NCBI GenBank assembly: GCA_950097015.1
Contig: CATNEN010000032.1
Span: 2,795,546 to 2,859,545 of the forward strand
DNA from: Macrostomum hystrix
Lineage: Eukaryota > Animalia > Platyhelminthes
Direction of reading: 5' to 3'
Length of the DNA stretch: 64,000 bases
Part shown: piece after piece, positions 9,856 to 23,790 of the stretch
Position numbering within the stretch: position 1 is the first letter of the stretch
Layout of the letters: each line of letters starts with the position of its first letter
The notes under the pieces: generated by a model
Databases searched by the model: none
What the model was told of the DNA's origin: nothing
The model's input: the letters and a program-made list of their open reading frames with translations, nothing else
Made by a program: the position numbers and the translations under genes

Positions 9856-12800
9856 ATGACGGGCGGCGGAAAATGCCGGACCTTCTTGAAGGAGAACCTG
9901 TTGCTGATCAGCACCCTGTTTGGTGTCGGTGGCTGGCATCGGGCTCGGCATTGGGCTGTACTTCGCCAAGCCGGACGACACCTGGCTGCTGTGGATCGGT
10001 GCGTGACTGTTGGGCGTGCCTGAGGGATTCATGTATGTTGGAGGCCCAGGACTCCTGACCAGGAGGTCGGTGAAAACCAGGGAAATATTCAGGTAAGAAA
10101 CATGAGATGAGGTGCGATGAGGAAAGCTGAGCATTCCTAGCTGCCTTCTCTAGGGTTTCCTGGCGAGCTGGTGCTCCGTGCCTTCAAGCTGCTCATCCTG
10201 CCACTTGTGATTTCCTGCGTGATCAACATCACTGCCAGCAGCAGCATTCGCGCTAACGGCACCATGGGCGGCCTTGCAATGCTGTATATCGTCACTACCA
10301 ACTTTGTGGGCGCGCTTCTCGGCCTTCTGTTTGTAGTGCTTATTCAACCCGGTAAGGCTGGAACCTAGGACTGCGTGCTATGCACTGGGCTCAAGCCAAG
10401 CACCCATTCCACGACAACCACCCTGCTCACGCCAGGCACCCAGCCGACACCGAACACCATCCAACACCGAACACCATCCAACACCAAACACCATCCCACG
10501 CCAAGCACATTCGCAAAGCAGCCACCAACACACCGATTACGCAACTTACGCCGAAATACACACACAAAGTTCATAGCAATGCAGGAATTTTAATCATATA
10601 ATCAAAACTTCAGGCTCCTCAGGTCAAGGTGGCGGTGGTGGTGGCAGCGGCGGCGGTGGAGGTCCCCCAATCAGTCGACTTACCACTTCGGACATCCTGA
10701 CAGATCTGTTTAGGTTTCTATTCCCTGAAAACTTCTGTCTGTAACTTCAAGACTAAGATATTGACTAGTACCTGTGACATATTATCTGTTGGTGTCAAAT
10801 TTCAGAAATCTCATACCTGACAACATCATCACAATGGCGTTTGAGACGGTAGCCTCTTTATTTCGCTTTTATCGATCTGGTATAAAGAGTCGCTGACTAA
10901 TGAACAATGTACTATTTTTCTCAGAGTCAGACGGTGTACATGCCCCAGCTAAGCAACGGCAGCACTCTTTACGTTCGGCAAAACGGCACCAGCCGGGGCA
11001 TGAACATCCTGGGCGCCCTGTTCGTTAGCGTACTGTTCGGCTTGGCCACCTCTGGCATGGGCGGGCGCGCGAGCGAGACATTTCGAGAGTTTTTTGACGC
11101 CGTCACCGGAGCTACGACGCTGCTATTGAGCAAAGTAATTTGGTGAGGCTCGTTGCTCCTGTTATGACGGTGCAGAGCATGATTCGAATATCCATGACTG
11201 TTGAAGCTCCTGTTATGACGGTGCAGAGCATGATTCGAATATCCATGACTGTTGAAGCTCCTGTTATGACAGTGCAGAGCATGATTCGAATATCCATGAC
11301 TGTTGAAGCTCCTTTTATGACGGTGCAGAGCATGATTCGAATATCCATGACTGTTGAAGCTCCTTTATGACAGTGCAGAGCATGATTCGAATATCCATGA
11401 CTGTTGAAGCTCCTGTTATGACAGTGCAGAGCATGATTCGAATATCCATGACTGTTGAAGCTCCTGTTATGACGGTGCAGAGCATGATTCGAATATCCAT
11501 GACTGTTGAAGCTCCTGTTATGACGGTGCAGAGCATGATTCGAATATCCATGACTGTTGAAGCTCCTGTTATGACGGTGCAGAGCATGATTCGAATATCC
11601 ATGACTGTTGAAGCTCCTGTTATGACGGTGCAGAGCATGATTCGAATATCCATGACTGTTGAAGCTCCTGTTATGACAGTGCAGAGCATGTGTAAGAGCC
11701 GGCGAAATTTAGATTGTCAGAAAGTACGCACGAGTTTATTTGGCATAACGATTCAATATATACGAGCAGGGCAGTGATGAGCACGATGAATAATAAAATA
11801 GGCTAAAGCCAGCCCCACCCCCAAGCGGGTGAAAGGCCGACGCCATGTACATTTAGACCAATCAGACAAGACGAGCCAACGCACAACACACCACGCAGGA
11901 ACCCCACATTACTCTCCCCCAAGAAAAGCGCAAGGGGAAGCAACAAAAAAAGGCAATAAAACACAACGAAAAAAAATTCAAAATGCATAACAAAAATAGT
12001 CCAAAAACTACAGTCCCTGTCACACAGTACCTAACTTGGCTACCAAGACGCTCTGAAATAGTCAGGAGGTCGCCGCTGCCTTCCTGAGCGACGGGGCCCT
12101 CCCTGACACTCGCCAGCCGCGGGCTCGCGCAGCAACTCCCAGGTGCCAGGGCCGTCCAGCTCCGGGTCGTGGCTCGCGTCAGCGGCTGCTGGAAGGGCCG
12201 CCGGCTGGCTCGCCGGCTGGGTCGCCGGCTGCGCCGCCGGCTGGGTCGCTGCGTTGTCAGTTCGGCTGACGAACGGCTTCATTCGATCATGGTGCACCAA
12301 TAATTTACGCCTGCCGTTCTCGGAGCGCACTCGGTAGTTCACGGGGCCGACCTTCTTGATGATGGTGTACGGGCCGGACCACCTGTTCGATAGTGACTTA
12401 CACTGGCCGCGCTTCATCGCCTGGTTCGTCAGCATCACCAGGTCCCCGACCTTAAACTCGACAGTCTCGGCGCCTCGGTTGTAAAACGCGTGCTGAGAGC
12501 TTTGAGCTGATTGCAGATTCGCTCGGACCACCTGAAAGCCGCGTCGGATTCTTGCCTGGATGTCCTCGCAGCTCCTCGGCAGGTCCTGTTGCCCTTGGAC
12601 ACCGAGCAGCAGGTCTGCGGGCTGTCGCGGCTCCATGCCCCGCAGAACCTTGAAGGGCGACTCGCCCGTAGAGCTGTGCGCCGAGCTGTTGTAAGCCCAC
12701 ACAACGTAGGGTAGCAGAATGTCCCAGCTGGTCTGGTTCGCTGCGCAGAAAGCTGACAGCATGTTGCCTAACGTTCGGTTGAACCTCTCGACGTTGCCGT

Positions 12801-15800
12801 TGCCACTGGGATGAAACGGTGATGTCCTCGACTTCTCTGTGCCCAGCGGTGCGCAAGTCTCCTTGAACAGCTCGGCCTCGAACTGCCGACCCTGGTCCGA
12901 GTGCACGACTTCCGGAACACCGTGTCGCAGTACCACGGCAGTCACCAGGGCCTCAGCCACCGTCTTGGCGTCGATCTGGCTAAGGGCTGCCGTTTCAACC
13001 CATTTTGAGAAGGTGTCAACAAAGCACAGAATGTAGCGCTTACCAGACGCGGTGGCCGGCAAGGGTCCCTTAATGTCAAGCTGCACGATTGACCACGGTC
13101 GGGCAGGCAACGGCTGCCGCACGAGCTCGGCACGGGCTCTCTTCGGCGCTCCCTTCCGGCGCTGGCAGACCGTACAGCTGCGCACCCAGTCTCGTACGTC
13201 TTCGCGCATTTCCGGCCACCAGGCGCGAGCTTGCAGCGCTCGCAGAACTCGACGTTGTCCGAGATGCCCGGCGCTAGGCAGGTCATGCGCCTGTTGCAGC
13301 AGCTCCGCACGCATGTGCTGAGGAATCACTGGCAGCCCGTTGTGAAGCAGCGCGCCGGCCGGTGACATCGACAGGCCAGGCATCAGTCTGTGAACCGCCG
13401 AACTCACAGCAGCAGGGACCTGGAAGTCGGGCTGTAGCATCGCCTGACGGGCCGCGTGTAGAATCTGGTCCAGGTCTTGCTCTTCCGGCAGGTTGGCGGT
13501 CTTAAATTGCACCGCGGCTGCTCGGCTGAGAGCGTCCGGCACGATGTTCTCCTTGCTAGGCCGGTAAAGGATCTCCAGCGGAAACTCCTGGATGAGCTGC
13601 AGCCAGCGCGCCAACCGTCCCGCAGGCTCCTTGGTGTTCAGCAGTCCGATGATCGGCTTGTGGTCGGTGAACACCTGGATACGGCTGCTATTACTCAGGT
13701 ACATTCGAAACTGCTTGAGACTCCATACCACGGCCAGGAGCTCTCGGTCCGTGGTGCTGTAGTTGCGCTCGGCCTTGCTCAGCGTTCTGGAGGCATAGGC
13801 CACCGGCAGATCCTCGCCGTCTCGCTCCTGGCTGAGCACCGCACCCAAAGCGACGGCACTGCTGTCACAGCTGATGGTAACGGGTCGATTGAAGTCTGGC
13901 AGCTGGAGCACGGGAGCCTGGGTAAGAGCGTCCTTCAGCTTGGCTAGTGCTGCCGCATGCTCGTCTGTCCATGCGAAACCCCCAGCGCTTTTCTGTGCCA
14001 GATGGTGCAGCGGCTTGGCGATGTCGGAGAAGTTGGGCACAAACCGGCGGTAGAAGCTCAGCATGCCGAGGATGCGCCGGACGTCCTGGTCCGACCGCGG
14101 GTCTGGCATCTGTCTGATCGCCTCGACCTTCTTTGCCGACTGTGCGATGCCGCTCTCGGAAACCTCGTGGCCCAGGTAGGTGACCTTCCGATAGGCGAAG
14201 AAGCTCTTGCCAGGGTTCAGCTTCAGTTCGGCGGACCGCAGACGCTGAAGAACATTGGACAACGACTGGAGATGACTCCCGAAGTCCTTGTTGAAGATGA
14301 TGAGATCGTCGATATAGGCGATGACCTCCTCCCAGCTGAGCCCTGTCATAATGAGTTCCATCATGCGCTGATAGGTTGCTGGCGCATTGCACATGCCAAA
14401 TCCCATTTTCCTGAACTGCATCAAGCCGCTCGGAGTGTAGAAAGCAGTTAACGGCCGGTCCTCCTCCCTGACTTCCACCTGGAGGAAGCCTTGTCGCATG
14501 TCGATGGTAGAAAACCAGGTGCAGCCAGCCAGAGAGTCGAGTGCCTGGTGCAAGTGCGGCAGCGGGTGAGCATCCTTGACAGTGAGGCTGTTTAGCGCTC
14601 GCCAGTCTACGCAGACTCGGATGTCATTGTTCTTCTTCCTGACGATCATGAGATTGCTGGCCCATGGGCTTGAAGACGGCTCGATGACGCCATGTTTTTG
14701 CATTTGAGCAAGCTTCTCGTCCACTTGCTTCCTGAAGGCGTGCGGCACACGACGGGGTCGCTGACGAATCGGATGTGCGCAGTCTTCCAGCTCGATCTTG
14801 TGTTGTGCAGCGCCACTCGTCCCTACGTCGAATTAGTGTGCCGAGACCACATCGGCGAACTGTGTCAGCAGAGCCTTTAGTCGGTCGCCGTCGACTGCTG
14901 GCAGATCCGGGTTGATGTTGAATTGGTCCGCAGGGCCTCGCCAGTCGTGCAAGTCCTCGTCCTCCTCGACGATATCGGCGCTCTCGAAGGTTCCGATGTT
15001 CTGGTTGGAGTACAGCGTGACTGGAGTGCATCCCAGATTGCACACCCGCACTGGGATTCTTCCATCGTTCGAAGACACTGCGAACACTCGGCAGGGCAGC
15101 ACTCCAGTTTTGTCAACGAACTCCTGGGAAGGTTCGAAAATGCCCTGGGCCTGCTTTGTTTCGATTGCCACCTTGACAACCTTCGTCGCTCTCGGCGGCA
15201 CGACTACAGCGTCTTGAACTCGGGCGATGAGCACCGTGGGAACCATGCAGTAGGACGACGACGCTCCTCGTTCAGACTCGGTGCTGCTGAACGGGACGGA
15301 AGCCTTGTCAAAGGTAACCGTCTGGGCCTTCTGGTCGATGCTAAATTGCGATGAAGCCATCCTGCTGATGAAGTCCATTCCAAGGATGAAGTCAGGCCGA
15401 ATTCCTTTCACCACCAGCACTTCGAGATGGCTGGTCAGCTGCTTGCCCAGTCGCACCGACAGGCTTATACTGCCCAGCAGCTCGAGGGTGGTGCCATCCA
15501 CCGATACCGGTTTAACCTCTGCTGGTTTCAGGTCGTTGCTGACCCCAAGCGATCTCACGGCGATGTCGCTGATAAGAGATGTCTGCGCTCCGGTGTCCAG
15601 CAGCCACCGGCACGGCATGCCATTCGCTAGGCCAGGAATAAAAATAGCATGCAGAACGGGATTGCTCCTGTGGGTTGGTGTGGGTCCCGCACCCGTCGCA
15701 CCAACCCTTAGAAGTTTCCCTGGGCCTTGGATGGGCAGACGGAGGCTTTGTGCCCCTTCCCTGAGCATTTGTGACAGATGATTGGGTCCAGCTTCTTCTC

Positions 15801-18524
15801 GCGCTGGCGACAATGAGCTGCCAGGTGCCCGGGCTGACCGCAGCTGAAGCAGGCGCCTGCTCGTTGCTGCCGGCGTCGCCGAGGATCGCTGCCTGGCTGC
15901 ACGCTGACCCTGGCGATGAGCTCCTCCATGCACCGCTCCAGCCGATCGAGGCGGTCAGATGTCGCATGAATTTCCGTAGTAGTGGCGCCAACAGCCTTGA
16001 CTGCTGTAACTGATGGTCGCCCTACCAGACCTTCCAGTCGGGCTGCTCGCTGCAGCATAGACTCCAGGCTGCAAGTCTCCGCGTCCTCTGCCTTTAAAAG
16101 GCTGTCGCGGATGTCAGGATTGAGCAGGTGCAGAAGCTTGAAACGCACGTCCCGATCTCGCTGCTGTGTTGAATCGTTCGGCCTGGCCTTCTGATGAAGC
16201 AGCCTCAGGTTAAAGCACAGCTCGCGTAGCGTCTCGTTCTCTCCGCGCTTCCTTGCGTGGAATGTGTTCATGGCCTTGAAGCTGTCAGACTCGCCACCAT
16301 AAAATTTTGTAAGCGCGGTTTCAATTTCCTTGTAGCTCTTCTGCTTCGTCGGCTCGAGATCCCAGACGATCAGTTGCGCCTCTCCAGTGAGCAACAGTTT
16401 GACTTTTGACGCCGATGTTTCGTCGTCCCACTTTGCATCCTGGCTGAATTCCTCAAACATACGCAGCCATCTTCGCACGTCAGTGTCGTCTGTGCCACTA
16501 AACTTTGGCGGCATAAGTGCATTTGAGTAGGCCATTAGAGCTCTGGGTTCTAGCTCGCTGCCACCAATGTAAGAGCAGGCGAAATTTAGATTGTCAGAAA
16601 GTACGCACGAGTTTATTTGGCATAACGATTCAATATATACGAGCAGGGCAGTGATGAGCACGATGAATAATAAAATAGGCTAAAGCCAGCCCCACCCCCA
16701 AGCGGGTGAAAGGCCGACGCCATGTACATTTAGACCAATCAGACAAGACGAGCCAACGCACAACACACCACGTAGGAACCCCACACATGATTCGAATATC
16801 CATGACTGTTGAAGCTCCTGTTATGACAGTGCAGAGCATGATTCGAATATCCATGACTGTTGAAGCTCCTGTTATGACGGTGCAAAGCATGATTCGAATA
16901 TCCACGACTGTTGAAGCTCCTGTTATGACGGTGCAGAGCATGATTCGAATATGTCTGACTTACGCGAGCACACTTTCTCACTGTTTTGTTCGTGAGTATG
17001 CTCTTAGGAGTGATATTTCAGTTTACAGCAGCGTTGTAGTACTCGTTCCACAAAAAACCTATTCACAGAGAACGGTAAATCTTTAAATCGAAAAGGTGTC
17101 TCCCACTCGGCCTAATGAGCCTAATTGCCAAATCACTGGCCGAAGTGCAGAACATGGAGCAGACCTTCATCAGCTTAGGCACCTTCATCGGCACGGTGGT
17201 GGCGGCGCTGGCGGTAAACCAGTTCATTGTACACCTGGTCATGTTTCTGGCATTCGTCCGCCGCAACCCATTCCCATTCTACTGGAAGATGATGAAGGCC
17301 TACCTGGTGGCCTTTAGTGCCAACAGCAGGTGCGTAGATGCTGCTTTGAACACTAATAGAAATTTCCATTTTTACAACGCTAAGTAAGGTCACACCTTTG
17401 GAAGGTCAGTACCGTCCAGAGATTTATACCGTCCTCCCCACTTTAATCTCTCCTAGTCAAGTTTGTAGCCAATCACCGCTCACCCTTCACTTTCTTTTTC
17501 TCCCCTCAAGACACCCACCTCACGCTAAGCCAATCAAGCTGCTCTATTCACTGACTATAACCCTTCTTATCCTGCTGCCCAACCACACGCCTCTCACTTT
17601 ACAGCCAATCGTGACTCGTCTATTAATAACTTCTTCTTGACATCTACAACTGGCTTCATATCTTGTGCATTTCACTCCAAGCGCACAGTCAGTCTGACCT
17701 GCTGAATGCCACGTCATCTCATCCTCGATTCACACCTTCGCAACCCCCAGCGTGTCAGCCCTCCCGGTGATGCTGGAGTGCGCTGACAATGCCGGCCTGC
17801 GGCCTCGCATCTCTCGCTTCATCCTGCCATTGTGCTGCAACACCAACTCGGACGGGTCCTGCGCCTACATCGCGGCCTCCGTCACCTTTCTGGCCCAGCT
17901 GAGCGGCACGCCACTCAGCTTCGGAAACTACATATTGATTGCGTAAGCACCTGTTGATAGCAATCAATATGAATCCTAACCTCGCTGACAAAGACCTCTG
18001 AAATCTTGTTAGATTCCTAGCAGGGGTTTCTGGACTCTCTCTGCCATCGGTTCCCAGCTCCAGCATCATCGTTATCATCGGAATTCTGTCGAATCTGGGC
18101 ATCCCGGATGCTGGAGTATCGCTGCTGTACACTGGCGAGTTCATTCTGTGAGTCTGCCTGCTTGATTAAGCTTTTTAATGACAAAAAACTCTATGCATTC
18201 TACTTAATTCCAATCCGTGACGCCTTCAGCGACCGTCTGCGCACCGGCTGCAACACCTGGAGCCACTGCACCTGCGCCGCCGCAATGGACGCCAGGATAC
18301 CCCAGTCCGAAGCTGAGAAGGCAGGGGCTACGGTCTTTGTTGAAGAGGGCGGCGATGTCGGCAGCGGCCAGGAGACAACTGAGCCTGCAGCCGGCTCGGC
18401 GACTGCAGTCGATGAAAGCAGCATCGCCGACTCGCAGGCGAACAGCGAGAGAGCCTTGCTGAGTGGTGGCCTGGGTGGTGACTTCGGCAAGGATGATTCA
18501 ACCCTGACTTCTGTGCAGGTCTAA
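9856..18524 (+). CDS. Divergent SLC1/EAAT (dicarboxylate/amino acid:cation symporter family) transporter, 9 exons, with a +1 frameshift in exon 1
   Basis: Model join(9856..9998,10154..10351,10614..10713,10806..10848,10925..11142,17096..17329,17751..17942,18013..18147,18230..18524), GT-AG and phase-consistent once one extra G at ~9928 is removed. SLC1 landmarks: FPGELVLRAFKLLILPLVIS, DLFRNLIPDN, GMNILG, RFILP..N.DG, LDRLRT..N. Confidence 0.88.
11155..11690. repeat. 51-bp minisatellite, left block (~10.5 copies), in SLC1 intron 5
   Basis: Unit ctcctgttatgac(g/a)gtgcagagcatgattcgaatatccatgactgttgaag; starts 13 bp after the splice donor at 11143; one 50-bp variant unit near 11360. Confidence 0.97.
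11691..11908 (-). repeat. Gypsy 3' LTR
   Basis: Direct repeat of 16568..16785; adjacent polypurine tract at ~11909-11922 on the minus strand. Confidence 0.95.
12040..15720 (-). pseudogene. pol: Gypsy pol (protease, RT, RNase H, integrase) with one in-frame TAA at 14833-14835
   Basis: Protease LLDTGAQTS; RT YIDDL; RNase H CDSS..G/DRELLAV/TDHKP; integrase HHCC (H..GH..CTVC), DIKGP/SDQGRQF/NGNVERFN and GPY motif. ORFs 14833..15933 and 12040..14748 share one frame separated only by the TAA. Confidence 0.92.
15657..15720 (-). promoter_or_regulatory. Putative -1 programmed ribosomal frameshift signal (G GGA AAC plus downstream stem/pseudoknot)
   Basis: Heptamer at 15714-15720 in the gag frame two codons before the gag stop; pol lies in the -1 frame; 6-nt spacer, then a perfect 9-bp stem GGGTTGGTG/CACCAACCC. 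Confidence 0.8.
15708..16535 (-). CDS. gag: Gypsy gag with two CCHC zinc knuckles
   Basis: ATG at 16535 just after the PBS; PPKFSG..DVRRWLRMFE capsid-like start; CFSCGQPGHLAAHC and CHKCSGKGHKASVC. Confidence 0.92.
   Translation of the reverse strand: MAYSNALMPPKFSGTDDTDVRRWLRMFEEFSQDAKWDDETSASKVKLLLTGEAQLIVWDLEPTKQKSYKEIETALTKFYGGESDSFKAMNTFHARKRGENETLRELCFNLRLLHQKARPNDSTQQRDRDVRFKLLHLLNPDIRDSLLKAEDAETCSLESMLQRAARLEGLVGRPSVTAVKAVGATTTEIHATSDRLDRLERCMEELIARVSVQPGSDPRRRRQQRAGACFSCGQPGHLAAHCRQREKKLDPIICHKCSGKGHKASVCPSKAQGNF
16555..16566 (-). other. Primer-binding site complementary to tRNA-Leu (AAG/UAG type) 3' end
   Basis: TGGTGGCAGCG immediately inside the 5' LTR is complementary to the known ...CGCUGCCACCA 3' end of these tRNAs. 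Confidence 0.75.
16568..16785 (-). repeat. Gypsy 5' LTR
   Basis: Minus strand TGTGGGGTTCC...CTCTTACA; ~99% identical to 11691..11908. Confidence 0.95.
16786..16952. repeat. 51-bp minisatellite, right block (~3.3 copies)
   Basis: Same unit as 11155..11690, resuming in register at the duplicated CATG. Confidence 0.96.
17397..17542 (+). repeat. 146-bp interspersed repeat, copy 1 (SLC1 intron 6)
   Basis: Reverse complement of 19166..19311 with three mismatches seen. Confidence 0.9.
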
Positions 18525-19165
18525 CTGATCTACTTTATATCTGCTAACTTTTTCACTCCAAAAATTATCACGAGTATATCCCTGAGTTAATAAATACGTA
18601 AATTTAATTATCCTGCATGTTTTTGTTACCTCAGTGTAACATTGCTTCTTCATTGAAAATCTACGATTACTCAAGTTCGTAAAATGAAATGAAAATCTAC
18701 CGTTTTAATTAATAGAAACCTGAAGCGTACACGGCGTATATACAAGGACTACTCAAGTAACTAGATAAATACTTGCTAGTAGCTAACCAGCTAACCAGCT
18801 AAACTTATACAGTCAAGCTGCAGCCAGTGAGGGGCCATCATTTCTATTCCGTTGACCTCTGAGCACGCAATTGTACGGGTATGTGTATCTGCTATCTGCT
18901 TTGAATTTTTCATCATCATGCAGTGAACACTACAAGGACCACTAGTAGTTAGCCTACTTTAGTAGGCGTTGGTACTTTTTCACTGTGCTCTGAGGGGTTG
19001 GCTCTCATGGGCGTGAATCGCGTGACAAGCGCCAAGTTTTCTCTCCGCGTCTCAAATTAATGTCACCTCACCGTGGATAAGAGCTCACGCATGAACTTAC
19101 GCCTAGATAATCAACAGTAGAAAGAACACGGGGCTATTTCAAATACCCACTGCCTACTGCCTACT

Positions 19166-21266: not shown

Positions 21267-23790
21267 AAATTCAAATGCAGAACCGATTAAACGCAAGCAA
21301 GTGCAGAAAATGTCACAAGAATTGTCGAATGGTCAACTGGCACGGCCCTTCGGCTCGCGTGGCCAATGGTAGAGCAAGTCCACTTCTAACCAAACCGAAT
21401 TCGCAACAGCCATTGCGATAGTATAACCATACTTGATCAGGATCAGGATCAGAATCACCCTAAAAGCTAGATTTTTATCTCAAGAATTATGTCTCCGTTG
21501 CTGCTCCTGTTGCTGCTGCTGCCATCAGTGGCTCCGCTGATTGCGCGCGATCGCCAGTACATCCTCGTATTGGACGCCGGCAGCACCGGAACTCGCATCA
21601 ACGTGTTCGCGTTCCGCTCTGACCTCAACCACTCCACCGGGCTGCGCATCGAGAGCCTTGAGGAGGAGAAAGTCAACCCGGGCCTGTCCGCATTTGCGAA
21701 CGCGCTGTCGCGCCTGCGCCAGAACCTCAAGCCGCTGTTGGACTTCGCCGCAGCTAAGGTGCCGGCAGAATACCACTCCCAGACTGCCGCCATTGTGCGG
21801 GCTACGGCCGGACTGCGTCTGCTGACACTCGACCAGCGAGATCGCGTCATCCGCGCTGTCGCCGAGGTTCTCCGCCGCTCCACCTTCAAAGTGCCAGACA
21901 GTGACCGGCGCGCGGTGCGCGTCATCAGCGGCCAGGAGGAGGCCGAGTACGGCTGGGTGGCCGTCAACTTTCTTATGGACTCCTTCGACAAGCCCGGCGG
22001 CGACACCTATGGCATGCTGGACTTGGGCGGTGGCTCCACGCAGATCACATTTGTACCGAAGGCTGACGATACGGCCGACTCCTACCGAGTGGTGTTTAAA
22101 ACGGTGCGCGGCAGGTCTTATTCTCTGCACGAGCACAGCTACCTGGGCTTGGGCATGTCGCAGGCCTCTCTGTACATGTTCGGCCACAACAGCAGCGTGG
22201 AGGCTTCGCTGCCGTTGTACACGTCACCGTGTCTCAACCCGGACTTTCGCGCCGAATTCAGCTTCGGCACCGTCTCGATCAACGTCTCCGGAGAGGCCGG
22301 AGTTGCCAGTTCCGATCGGCACCGGCTGTGCTCGGACATCGCCCGCATTCCGCTGCGCATTGTGCCAGTGCACCAGCCGCCGGGCGTCAAGGTCGCCAGA
22401 TTCGTGGCTGTCAGCTCATTTTACTACACGGCTGCCACGCTGAGTAAAGGGGGCTATTTGACAAACAGCATACCTGGCAATGCTAGGATTAGTGACCTGG
22501 CTTCGGCAGCTGAGAGGGTGTGCCTCAATCCTCCAGTGGTGGGAAAGTACGAGCCATACCTGTGCATGAACACTCTGTACATTGTTACTCTGCTGCGCGA
22601 GGGCTACCGATTTGAGGCCAACCAGAGCCTTTTACTCACTGACAGCATCAGGGGCTACTCGGCCAGCTGGCCGCTGGGCATCGCCATTCATCAGCTGACC
22701 TGCCATGACCGCAACAGCCTGGCCTGCCTGGGCAGCTCCGCTCAGCCCAGTGTTTTGGCTGTCCAGCTGTTGCAGCCGGTGACGCTGCTGCTGTCGCTGG
22801 CGACGCTGCTACCCAGACTGTTCTGATTGGAGGGCAGATTTGCGCCATAAAATCACTCTTCGGCTTTATTTAATGTGAAACCCATATTAGGCATAAAAAC
22901 TAAACTCTTGTCAGCAAACATCAGACTCCTGGATTTTCCTACAAACACTTAAAAACCAGAAAAATACTTTCGAACGACGACGAACGTCGAACGATGAACG
23001 TGAGTTTCGTAGCTTTAATGCAAAATTAAAGCATCATTAAGCAAATATAGAACTTAAAAACACAGACACTCTTTGAACTACTAAATCAGACTTTTGAACT
23101 TTTAGATTCATTTTTATTTCTGTTTTTATAATGAGATTTTCCTTCAGAATTTCCGGCAGAGAGACCTGACTTCATTTGCATTTTCCTACGGTCCAATGGT
23201 TCTGGAGTGAGCAGTTTTCAATTCGCCTGACAGATTCAGAGATTGCACAAGAATTCAATCAATCAACCAATCAGTGCATGACTTGATCAATTCATCAAGC
23301 CGGTCGATCTCCGAGGGATTTTAGACCCCAGCAGCTACTTTGGGTAAGTAAAAGTTCGACAGTAGGGGCCCGGCCGGACTTGCTACATCTGCTGCGAGAT
23401 TTCCTTCGCATGAAGAGGAAAATGTCACGGACTTTCGGGTGCGGCAGCAGTTGCTACCCAAGTCGGGTGAATGGGGAGATGCTGCAGGTCAGCTGTCTGG
23501 GCAACTGCGCGCTGTTGTGAACGGACACGGGTGCTGCGAATGTAAGACTGTAGAGGAATTCAGTCAAATAAAGTAGGATCTGGGGGTGGGGTCACAGTCA
23601 CTTCTCTAGGACTACAGTCGAATCTGTATCATTTTGGAGGTTTTCAGCTTTTCAGCTATACCGAAGTTCAGTCTCCATGGAAAACTGCTTTCAATTAATC
23701 TACTGGCAACAATGTCAGCCACACGGTACCTCTACTTCGTCAAAGTCATCTTGCTTGCCTGTCTTTCCTGACTCGATCGCCAGTTCTTAA
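21267..23790 (+). repeat. Segmental duplication copy A (contains NTPDase A)
   Basis: Colinear with 37198..39417, except for ~295 bp (about 23317-23610) absent from copy B. Confidence 0.92.
21489..22826 (+). CDS. Intronless GDA1/CD39-family NTPDase (apyrase), copy A, 445 aa, signal peptide plus C-terminal hydrophobic (GPI-like) tail
   Basis: All five apyrase conserved regions: VLDAGSTGTR, ATAGLRLL, GQEEAEYGWVAVN, DLGGGSTQI, ASWPLG. N-terminus MSPLLLLLLLLP; C-terminus SSAQPSVLAVQLLQPVTLLLSLATLLPRLF. Confidence 0.95.
   Translation: MSPLLLLLLLLPSVAPLIARDRQYILVLDAGSTGTRINVFAFRSDLNHSTGLRIESLEEEKVNPGLSAFANALSRLRQNLKPLLDFAAAKVPAEYHSQTAAIVRATAGLRLLTLDQRDRVIRAVAEVLRRSTFKVPDSDRRAVRVISGQEEAEYGWVAVNFLMDSFDKPGGDTYGMLDLGGGSTQITFVPKADDTADSYRVVFKTVRGRSYSLHEHSYLGLGMSQASLYMFGHNSSVEASLPLYTSPCLNPDFRAEFSFGTVSINVSGEAGVASSDRHRLCSDIARIPLRIVPVHQPPGVKVARFVAVSSFYYTAATLSKGGYLTNSIPGNARISDLASAAERVCLNPPVVGKYEPYLCMNTLYIVTLLREGYRFEANQSLLLTDSIRGYSASWPLGIAIHQLTCHDRNSLACLGSSAQPSVLAVQLLQPVTLLLSLATLLPRLF

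What the first reader, a model, noticed from the sequence alone, without database searches (positions are those of the whole stretch)
17096..18524. SLC1/EAAT-fold transporter with altered ion-coupling and gate residues
Seen after splicing exons 6-9 and aligning by eye to canonical motifs. TM7 NMDGTALYE becomes NSDGSCAYI (the Met and the EAAT proton/K+-coupling Glu are lost). HP1 TSSSSAT becomes ANSSVSA. The HP2 tip GAAGIPQAG becomes SLPSVPSSS (gate glycines replaced). TM8 DRLRTTTNVLGD becomes DRLRTGCNTWSH, so the Na1-site Asp (GltPh D405 equivalent) is His. The substrate Asp/Arg/Thr/Asn (GltPh D394, R397, T398, N401) are retained. Established: these positions determine Na+/H+/K+ coupling in EAATs and GltPh. 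Inference: this may belong to an uncharacterised invertebrate SLC1 clade that binds an acidic substrate but is uncoupled, differently coupled, or acts as a ligand-gated anion channel or sensor.
Basis: partly seen in the sequence, partly recalled or inferred. Interest (0 to 1): 0.72.

Follow-up and report, generated by a model that had tools for sequence, protein, structure and literature searches.

The report
Divergent SLC1 transporter subfamily in flatworm
This is the 3' half of an expressed, strongly conserved flatworm (Macrostomum) gene from a previously unremarked animal branch of the glutamate-transporter (SLC1) family, in which the residues that normally bind sodium, protons and potassium are replaced while the amino-acid-binding residues are kept, so it probably carries an acidic amino acid by a different ion-coupling rule.

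Summary
Observation confirmed. Exons 6-9 (17096-18524) belong to a 9-exon SLC1 gene (9856-18524, + strand).

The gene is not decaying. An RNA contig from a public run is spliced exactly as modelled for exons 1-5 and joins exon 5 to exon 6. Against the Macrostomum lignano orthologues, dN/dS is 0.02 with dS about 1.6.

An apparent frameshift in exon 1 of the window is absent from both a DNA contig and the RNA contig.

The odd residues are not private. Hemichordates, gastropods and a cestode carry the same signature: N-[R/S/G]-D-G-S-C, P-S-V-P-S, and ...S-H in place of ...G-D405. Together they form a clade with 100/100 support, which stays at 100/99 when the motif columns are removed. Its sister is an arthropod pair with canonical sodium sites.

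The window protein changes the same three positions (T92, M311, D405) that mark proton-coupled bacterial homologues. It also lacks the EAAT proton/potassium glutamate.

The altered-coupling part is well motivated but untested, and the HP2 argument is weak.

Novelty: new variant of a known kind. Interest 0.55.

The parts
9856..9998 (+). Exon 1 (ATG at 9856; N-terminus and TM1). The window has one extra base at 9927/9928 that shifts the frame.
   Evidence: Frame 0 reads MTGGGKCRTFLKENLLLISTLFGV, then frame +1 reads VAGIGLGIGLYFAKPDDTWLLWI. The DNA contig of X1 and the RNA contig of X2 both leave out one base here. Without it the ORF is intact at 518 aa.
10154..10351 (+). Exon 2 (TM2-TM3). It holds the Na3-site position, LPLVISCVINIT, where N72 stands for GltPh T92 / EAAT3 T101.
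   Evidence: Joint 9998|10154 is seen in the RNA contig. Pfam SDF profile 29-93. Alignments.
10614..10713 (+). Exon 3 (Gly-rich loop after TM3, start of TM4a).
   Evidence: Joint 10351|10614 in the RNA contig.
10806..10848 (+). Exon 4.
   Evidence: Joints 10713|10806 and 10848|10925 in the RNA contig.
10925..11142 (+). Exon 5 (extracellular loop with two N-X-S/T sequons, TM4c).
   Evidence: In the RNA contig the loose end behind 11145 reads the start of exon 6. Sequons NGS172 and NGT181.
11143..17095 (+). Intron 5. It holds a 51-bp minisatellite (11155-11690 and 16786-16960) split by a young Ty3/gypsy-like LTR retroelement (11691-16785, genes on the - strand).
   Evidence: pol ORF 12040-14748 (902 aa), with gag and protease ORFs up to 16661. 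The 218-bp LTRs are 99.1% identical, run TG..CA, and are flanked by the duplicated CATG. The intron is spliced out in RNA. The M. lignano intron 5 is about 108 nt.
17096..17329 (+). Exon 6 (TM5, TM6, HP1a; ends in ...AFSANS-S).
   Evidence: Pfam SDF profile 181-254, E 2e-11. 81% nucleotide identity and about 95% amino-acid identity to M. lignano.
17751..17942 (+). Exon 7 (HP1b, TM7). NSDGSCAYI is at 17845-17871.
   Evidence: Pfam E 7.7e-15. Ungapped alignment to ASCT2, EAAT1 and GltPh 281-339.
18013..18147 (+). Exon 8 (HP2). SLPSVPSSS is at 18038-18064.
   Evidence: Pfam profile 322-360. Alignment to EAAT1.
18230..18524 (+). Exon 9 (TM8 with DRLRTGCNTWSH at 18231-18266, His433 at 18264-18266). 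It continues into a disordered acidic tail that ends in the conserved TSVQV, then the stop.
   Evidence: Tail pN is 0.51 against core pN 0.037, while the last five residues are identical to M. lignano. The tail has pLDDT below 50 in the model.

Best explanation
The stretch is the transport-domain half (TM5 to TM8 plus tail) of an intact, transcribed, 9-exon SLC1 gene. The organism is a Macrostomum flatworm that is not the sequenced M. lignano strain.

The protein is a functional member of an old bilaterian SLC1 subfamily that has gone unremarked. I call it the 'SH clade' here. It was found in flatworms (Macrostomum, a cestode), gastropods and hemichordates. Its sister is an arthropod group with canonical sites.

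The subfamily keeps the residues that hold an acidic amino acid: D394, R397, T398, N401, T314 as Ser, and an aromatic residue at 317. So it most likely still binds aspartate, glutamate or a close analogue and moves it by the usual elevator mechanism.

It has lost the carboxylate of the Na1 site. D405 is His and is invariant in the clade, and G404 is Ser. It has also lost the EAAT proton/potassium glutamate, which is Ile or Val here. The NMDGT methionine is replaced by Arg in most members and by Ser in Macrostomum. Macrostomum additionally replaces the TM3 Na3 threonine with Asn or Lys.

Because neutralising D405 in GltPh mimics a Na1-bound state, and because T92, M311 and D405 are the signature changes of proton-coupled bacterial homologues, the most likely mechanism is transport without Na1 and without K+ counter-transport. 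That means a carrier or exchanger with reduced or no Na+ dependence, possibly pH-sensitive through the His.

Shown: gene structure, expression, selection, clade membership and residue states. Inferred: substrate class and ion coupling.
For: - Gene model and family. The AF2 model of the orthologue has pLDDT 77.7 (core above 85), with TM-score up to 0.93 to ASCT2 and 0.84-0.89 to EAAT1-3 chains.
- Expression and splicing: the 1704-nt X2 contig carries all E1-E5 joints and the E5-E6 joint across the 5.9-kb intron.
- Intact ORF in reads: a 1-base deletion relative to the window is seen in both X1 and X2.
- Purifying selection: against M. lignano L001/L002 over 300 core codons, dN is 0.038, dS about 1.6 and omega 0.02. 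Across E6 to the end of the core there are 9 nonsynonymous against 97 synonymous differences. Third-position identity is 52%, against 94-96% at first and second positions. The tail is nearly unconstrained.
- Clade: shared motifs in P0153, P0205, P0088, P0204/P0140, P0068, P0046/P0324 and P0148. The careful ML tree gives 100/100 and 100/99 after dropping the TM3, HP1, TM7, HP2 and TM8 motif columns.
- Residue roles: PMC12668577 gives the signature [T/S]92X, M311L, D405N for H+-coupled homologues, and assigns R397 and D394 to the substrate carboxylate and amino group. PMC9171649 shows that D405N uncouples HP2 opening from Na+ and partly mimics Na1 occupancy.
Against: - There are no functional data for any member of the clade.
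- N310 and D312 are kept, and most clade members other than Macrostomum keep the TM3 Thr or Ser. Na3, and perhaps Na2, could therefore still bind.
- The Met position has a kinetic rather than stoichiometric role in GltTk (PMC8431971).
- His is not the Asn of the bacterial proton-coupled proteins, and the putative protonation change S279E is absent (Val or Ala here).
- The Met-position residue differs within the clade (Arg, Ser, Gly), so no single chemistry is conserved there.
- The clade sample is small, about ten sequences from three phyla, because the searches were capped.
- The reference sequence itself carries a frameshift in exon 1, so a null allele in the assembled haplotype cannot be excluded.
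Confidence: 0.6

Rival explanations
1. It is an ordinary Na+-coupled EAAT-type glutamate/aspartate transporter. The substitutions are tolerated, and Na+ is still bound through backbone carbonyls, N310, D312 and water. Only affinity and kinetics are shifted.
For: N310, D312, N401 and the substrate residues are kept. The Met does not set stoichiometry in GltTk (PMC8431971). The uncoupled reconstructed ancestor in PMC12668577 shows that the residues at these sites and the coupling behaviour can be dissociated, so residues alone do not prove the mode.
Against: The only acidic ligand of Na1 is gone in all clade members, and the proton/potassium glutamate is hydrophobic. The same three positions mark non-Na+-coupled bacterial homologues (PMC12668577). 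From my own knowledge, not checked here: EAAT3 D455 mutants are exchange-only, and E374Q loses H+ coupling.
Confidence: 0.15
2. It no longer transports. It works as a substrate-gated anion channel, like EAAT4/5 taken to the extreme, or as a sensor (transceptor).
For: All SLC1 proteins have an uncoupled anion conductance (established knowledge). Loss of the coupling sites could slow the cycle. The same genome is noted to hold further SLC1 paralogues with even more eroded motifs (untested notes).
Against: The whole transport domain is under very strong constraint (omega 0.015 from E6 to the end of the core). The substrate site is intact, which fits transport at least as well as gating. Nothing here specifically points to channel function.
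Confidence: 0.1
3. It has a different substrate class, for example neutral amino acids, dicarboxylates, taurine or cysteine-type substrates. The Cys/Ser-rich pocket (LPLCC, DGSC, GCN, SHCTC) would have retuned specificity.
For: A315 is Cys across the clade, and there are several extra Cys around the pocket in Macrostomum. HP1 differs (SSV/SSA in place of SSS). Arg at the Met position in most members would add a positive charge next to the substrate.
Against: D394 and R397 define acidic amino-acid selectivity (PMC12668577), and both are invariant in the clade.
Confidence: 0.12
4. It is a decaying pseudogene or a dead paralogue.
For: There is a frameshift in exon 1 of the window. A 5-kb retroelement sits in intron 5.
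Against: The extra base is absent from independent DNA and RNA contigs. The intron with the element is spliced out. Omega is 0.02 at near-saturated dS. The motifs are conserved across phyla.
Confidence: 0.02

Closest known systems
Human EAAT1-3 and ASCT1/2 (SLC1A1-5; structures 5llu, 8oui, 7xr4, 6s3q)
   Same: The proteins are collinear end to end (E 4.6e-76 to EAAT1cryst) at about 30% identity. The fold is the same (TM-score up to 0.93). HP1, TM7, HP2 and TM8 have the same architecture. D394, R397, T398, N401, N310 and D312 are kept. As in ASCTs, the proton/potassium glutamate is absent.
   Different: D405 (Na1) is His and G404 is Ser. The NMDGT Met is Ser, the TM3 Thr is Asn, A315 is Cys, and the HP2 tip reads SLPSVPSSS in place of GAAGIPQAG. 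Unlike ASCTs, it keeps the Arg that binds the side-chain carboxylate.
Proton-coupled bacterial homologues (GltP/DctA type, the 'Ext-H' group of PMC12668577)
   Same: The same three signature positions are changed: T92, M311 and D405.
   Different: The replacement residues differ: Asn/Lys, Ser/Arg and His here, against hydrophobic, Leu and Asn there. There is no S279E. The change arose independently inside the metazoan EAAT radiation.
Arthropod sister group (Eumeta P0025, Darwinula P0045)
   Same: These are the nearest relatives in the tree (100/98, and 100/95 without motif columns). They share the S-V-P-S HP2 and a hydrophobic residue at the EAAT glutamate position.
   Different: They keep NMDGT and G-D405, so their Na1 and Na2 ligands are canonical.
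Other SH-clade members (Ptychodera XP_070535618, Glandiceps, Lymnaea CAL1527171, Aplysia XP_035824745, Nucella, Mesocestoides VDD79308)
   Same: They share ...S/L-H at 404-405, D-G-S/T-C/A, P-S/N-V/I-P-S, and E-W/F before DRxR. D394, R397 and N401 are invariant.
   Different: Most have Arg at the Met position (the cestode has Gly, with Lys at N310) and keep a Thr or Ser in TM3. Macrostomum has Ser at the Met position and Asn or Lys in TM3. Identity to these members is only 32-35%.

Membership tests
SLC1 / sodium:dicarboxylate symporter family (Pfam PF00375) | A significant match to the family profile, collinear over the protein. | tested here: met
   Exons 2, 6 and 7 score above the gathering cut-off on their own. 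Exons 5 and 8 match collinearly with weaker scores. The orthologue P0151 carries PF00375.
SLC1 / sodium:dicarboxylate symporter family (Pfam PF00375) | The GltPh/EAAT fold: a scaffold domain plus a transport domain with two re-entrant hairpins. | tested here: met
   The AF2 model of the orthologue has pTM 0.75. Foldseek's top 50 hits are all SLC1 structures, with TMt up to 0.93.
Canonical EAAT (3 Na+/1 H+ in, 1 K+ out) | An Asp at the Na1 site (GltPh D405 / EAAT3 D455). | tested here: not met
   His433 in the window (18264-18266). His is invariant in all clade members.
Canonical EAAT (3 Na+/1 H+ in, 1 K+ out) | The NMDGT motif with Met311. | tested here: not met
   The motif reads NSDGS.
Canonical EAAT (3 Na+/1 H+ in, 1 K+ out) | The proton/potassium-coupling Glu in TM7 (EAAT3 E374). 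| tested here: not met
   Ile352 in the window, and Ile, Val or Leu in the clade.
Canonical EAAT (3 Na+/1 H+ in, 1 K+ out) | The Na3 ligands: TM3 Thr, N310 and D312. | tested here: inconclusive
   N344 and D346 are kept. The TM3 Thr is Asn72 in the window and Lys in P0151.
Canonical EAAT (3 Na+/1 H+ in, 1 K+ out) | The acidic amino-acid site: D394, R397, T398, N401 and T314. | tested here: met
   D422, R425, T426 and N429 are kept, and S348 is a conservative change.
Canonical EAAT (3 Na+/1 H+ in, 1 K+ out) | A measured stoichiometry. | not testable with these tools
   This needs flux or reversal-potential assays.
ASCT-type neutral amino-acid exchanger | R397 replaced by Cys or Thr. | tested here: not met
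   The Arg is retained (R425).
Bacterial H+-coupled GltP/DctA type | The signature [T/S]92-to-hydrophobic, M311L, D405N, together with clustering with those bacterial sequences. | tested here: not met
   The same positions are changed but to other residues. The protein nests inside metazoan EAAT-like sequences, far from DctA-type rows.
'SH clade' (proposed here) | Monophyly with the hemichordate, gastropod and cestode sequences that carry S/L-H at 404-405. | tested here: met
   UFBoot/SH-aLRT is 100/100 and 100/99 with the motif columns removed.

The most novel reading that the evidence does not exclude
A bilaterian SLC1 subfamily has independently repeated, inside animals, the switch away from Na+ coupling that is known from bacteria. 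The Na1 aspartate has become a titratable histidine, and in most members the methionine beside Na2 and the substrate has become an arginine. The protein would then be a Na+-independent, pH-driven or pH-gated carrier of acidic amino acids. The tethered charges would stand in for bound ions.
Probability: 0.25. Interest if true: 0.75.

Novelty: new variant of a known kind. Interest (0 to 1): 0.55.

Why it matters
How SLC1 transporters couple substrate to 3 Na+, H+ and K+ is an active question. The one natural 'experiment' studied so far is the bacterial Na+-to-H+ transition (PMC12668577).

This clade offers a second, independent and animal-internal case. The same three positions are changed, but to different chemistries (His, Arg/Ser, Asn/Lys). 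The changes are held under strong purifying selection and conserved across at least three phyla.

It gives concrete constructs for testing what the Na1 carboxylate and the NMDGT methionine contribute to coupling: the Macrostomum, Ptychodera and Lymnaea proteins, plus reversions at the His, the Met position and the TM3 position.

It also warns that automatic names such as 'excitatory amino acid transporter 2/3-like' on these proteins should not be read as evidence of glutamate clearance of the vertebrate kind. Macrostomum lignano is a tractable model (RNAi, in situ hybridisation, transgenesis), so the biology can be followed up.

Tried and rejected
- **Pseudogene.** I raised this after finding the exon 1 frameshift. 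I rejected it.
- **Word-index protein searches.** The three searches used P0151, the clade alignment A2 and the Ptychodera region 320-460. They returned mostly bacterial or canonical proteins and added only Ptychodera and Glandiceps. The gastropod and cestode members came from the exhaustive phmmer search with exon 7 and a motif scan of its hits. The taxonomic breadth found is therefore a lower bound.
- **Organisms B and C.** X9 and X10 did not lay on E1-E5, so no within-complex dN/dS could be made.
- **Literature.** Searches for the motif strings, ApGT2, the Mlig gene ids and a flatworm glutamate transporter found nothing relevant.
- **Cys/His metal site at Na1.** I considered one formed by C340 and H433. 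Model coordinates are not returned, so I could not measure it. It stays a speculation.
- **Convergence as the cause of the clade.** I considered that the clade might be an artefact of convergent motif columns. I rejected this by the control tree without those columns.
- **Macrostomum with hemichordates.** This grouping inside the clade is not robust. It scores 98/94 with the motif columns and 81/47 without, with a long-branch warning.
Full report
**1. What is in the sequence**

The + strand between 9856 and 18524 carries a 9-exon gene. All introns are GT..AG.

| Exon | Coordinates |
|---|---|
| E1 | 9856-9998 |
| E2 | 10154-10351 |
| E3 | 10614-10713 |
| E4 | 10806-10848 |
| E5 | 10925-11142 |
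| E6 | 17096-17329 |
| E7 | 17751-17942 |
| E8 | 18013-18147 |
| E9 | 18230-18524 |

The finding covers E6-E9. E2-E9 give one open frame of 471 codons.

Each conserved exon matches Pfam SDF (PF00375), and the matches run on collinearly across the joints: E6 covers profile 181-254, E7 257-319 and E8 322-360. This is strong homology support for the splice model.

E7 alone finds ASCT2, EAAT1-3 and GltPh among solved structures, in ungapped alignments.

**2. Is the gene alive?**

Exon 1 of the window is frameshifted near 9927. Frame 0 reads MTGGGKCRTFLKENLLLISTLFGV, and frame +1 continues VAGIGLGIGLYFAKPDDTWLLWI.

- A genomic contig of run X1 leaves out one base at 9928.
- A 1704-nt contig of run X2 leaves out one base at 9927.
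- Either deletion gives ...TLFGVVAGIG... and an intact 518-codon ORF.

The X2 contig is spliced at 9998|10154, 10351|10614, 10713|10806 and 10848|10925. Its loose end behind 11145 reads the first bases of exon 6. The gene is therefore transcribed, and the 5.9-kb intron 5 is removed.

For E6-E9 the RNA evidence is indirect. Seven runs from two studies hold 0.54-0.64 of the sampled 31-mers of 17090-18530. I compute about 0.53 for words lying wholly in exons. The 911 letters of the X2 contig that lie beyond exon 5 fit four spliced exons plus about 58 nt of UTR.

**3. Organism and orthologues**

An exhaustive phmmer search of E7 against 1.84 billion representatives found one close cluster, P0001 at 98% identity. 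The next best hits were about 42-52% identical.

P0001 and P0151 are Macrostomum lignano proteins (PAA52316, PAA71826, PAA49806), and P0152 is a third copy. All three carry ANSSVSALP, NSDGSCAYI, SLPSVPSSS and DRLRTGCNTWSH.

The window protein is 84% identical to P0151 overall, and the exons are 76-86% identical at the DNA level. The window therefore comes from another Macrostomum species. No protein of the window's own genome was listed in the 90% clusters.

I compared the window with the two M. lignano loci over 300 core codons, using Nei-Gojobori.

| Measure | Value |
|---|---|
| dN | 0.038 |
| dS | 1.56-1.64 |
| omega | 0.02 |
| Nonsynonymous differences, E6 to end of core | 9 |
| Synonymous differences, E6 to end of core | 97 |
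| Third-position identity | 52% |
| First- and second-position identity | 94-96% |

The C-terminal tail is almost free to vary (pN 0.51), except for its first dozen residues and the last five, TSVQV.

The data do not meet it.

**4. The odd residues define a clade**

The full-length alignment showed that Ptychodera flava 'EAAT3-like' (P0153) shares the same peculiarities: FNRDGSCMF, SLPSVPSGS and DAIRTGVNCVSH.

A motif scan of all fetched proteins added more members:
- Lymnaea P0088: NRDGSC, IPNVPSSS, ...NLVSH.
- Aplysia P0140/P0204.
- Nucella P0068.
- A Gigantopelta fragment, P0148.
- Glandiceps P0205.
- The cestode Mesocestoides P0046/P0324: LKGDGS, IPNIPSSS, ...VLH.

A careful IQ-TREE analysis (LG+C20, 32 rows) puts these sequences on one branch with UFBoot/SH-aLRT 100/100. 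The sister group, at 100/98, is an arthropod pair: the moth Eumeta and the ostracod Darwinula. That pair keeps NMDGT and G-D but already has S-V-P-S-A-A-L in HP2 and a hydrophobic residue at the EAAT glutamate position.

As a control I removed the TM3, HP1, TM7, HP2 and TM8 motif columns. The clade stays at 100/99 and the sister relation at 100/95. The grouping of Macrostomum with hemichordates inside the clade is not robust: 98/94 with the motif columns, 81/47 without.

Invariant in the clade are D394, R397, N401 and His at 405.

First-reader notes on the same genome mention further odd SLC1 paralogues, one with KGDGS like the cestode protein. I did not test these notes.

**5. Residue by residue**

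The numbering is GltPh, followed by the window protein.

| Site | GltPh residue | Window residue | Notes |
|---|---|---|---|
| Na1 | D405 | H433 | G404 becomes S432; N401 is kept (N429); G306 becomes C340 |
| Na3 | TM3 Thr (T92; EAAT3 T101) | N72 | Lys in P0151, Asn in P0152; N310 and D312 are kept |
| Na2 and substrate lid | M311 | S345 | Arg in most clade members |
| Proton/potassium Glu | EAAT3 E374 (GltPh Q318) | I352 | |
| Substrate | D394, R397, T398, N401 | D422, R425, T426, N429 | all kept |
| Substrate | T314 | S348 | conservative change |
| Substrate | Y317 | Y351 | kept |
| HP1 | S277-S279 | S311, S312, V313 | |
| HP2 tip | GAAGIPQAG | SLPSVPSSS | the central Pro is kept |

PMC12668577 states that biochemically characterised proton-coupled homologues carry [T/S]92-to-hydrophobic, M311L and D405N. 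It also states that R397 and D394 set the preference for acidic amino acids.

PMC9171649 shows that D405N in GltPh uncouples HP2 opening from Na+ and partly mimics a Na1-bound state.

PMC8431971 shows that the methionine does not set the Na+ stoichiometry of GltTk.

**6. Mechanism**

From these facts I infer that the protein still binds an acidic amino acid and moves it by the elevator mechanism. The AF2 model of the orthologue superposes on ASCT2 and EAAT structures with TM-score up to 0.93.

I also infer that it does so without Na1 and without the proton/potassium glutamate. In Macrostomum the Na3 site is probably altered as well.

The likeliest outcome is a carrier or exchanger with reduced or no Na+ dependence. 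The invariant His may make it pH-sensitive.

Two N-glycosylation sequons lie in the long extracellular loop, and the C-terminal motif is conserved. Both fit a surface membrane protein.

None of this has been measured. The retained N310 and D312, and the retained TM3 Thr in other clade members, leave room for partial Na+ coupling.

**7. Comparison with what is known, and novelty**

It is a member of the SLC1 family by profile, by collinearity and by fold.

It fails three defining features of the canonical EAAT coupling machinery: the Asp at Na1, the Met of NMDGT and the TM7 Glu. It also fails the ASCT feature of an Arg replaced by Cys or Thr.

It resembles the bacterial proton-coupled type in which positions are changed. 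It differs in the residues used and in descent.

I found no paper in the held library that describes this clade or its motifs. The sequences are public under automatic EAAT-like names.

I therefore rate it a new variant of a known kind, with moderate interest.

**8. Limits**
- The clade's taxonomic spread is a lower bound, because the three word-index searches performed poorly.
- There is no direct read evidence over the E6-E9 joints.
- I had no model coordinates with which to inspect the His and Cys geometry.
- The extra base in exon 1 could be a true allele of the assembled haplotype.

Noticed in passing
window 9927-9928: The window has one extra base in exon 1 that frameshifts the SLC1 ORF. 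An independent genomic contig (X1) and an RNA contig (X2) both lack it. It is probably an assembly indel, or possibly a null allele of the assembled haplotype.
   Followed up: partly
window 11691-16785 (- strand genes): A young Ty3/gypsy-like LTR retroelement lies in intron 5. It has an intact 902-aa pol ORF (12040-14748) and gag/protease ORFs. Its 218-bp LTRs (11691-11908 and 16568-16785) are 99.1% identical, run TG..CA, and are flanked by the target duplication CATG. It is absent from the M. lignano orthologues, whose intron 5 is about 108 nt, and it is spliced out with the intron.
   Followed up: partly
window 11155-11690 and 16786-16960: A minisatellite with a unit of about 51 bp (...CTCCTGTTATGACGGTGCAGAGCATGATTCGAATATCCATGACTGTTGAAG...) is split in two by the retroelement insertion. 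It creates long spurious ORFs on both strands.
   Followed up: partly
window 18507-18521 (protein C-terminus TSVQV): The last five residues are identical to those of M. lignano, although the preceding tail of about 55 residues is almost unconstrained (pN 0.51). This may be a PDZ-type or sorting motif. Ptychodera ends in -SKV.
   Followed up: no
window 10069-10071 (codon N72) versus P0151 and P0152: The residue at the Na3 threonine position varies among close Macrostomum copies (Asn in the window and P0152, Lys in P0151), while the rest of the core is nearly invariant. This suggests the position is no longer an ion ligand.
   Followed up: no
other pieces of the same genome (notes s1-313518, s1-342714, s1-300531): First-reader notes describe three more SLC1 paralogues with eroded motifs: KGDGS; NKNAA with R397G and D405N; and one with all motifs lost. 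The KGDGS form matches the cestode Mesocestoides protein (LKGDGS) that falls in the same clade, which hints at an expansion of non-canonical SLC1 genes in flatworms.
   Followed up: no
window 10614-10680: The Gly-rich (GGN)n stretch in exon 3 attracts unrelated contigs from several runs. It explains the depth spike and the loose ends at 10627-10662 in the reads table.
   Followed up: no
window 21489-22826: There is an intronless GDA1/CD39-type apyrase ORF (445 aa) downstream. Other first-reader notes already flag it (s1-270699, s1-268171).
   Followed up: no
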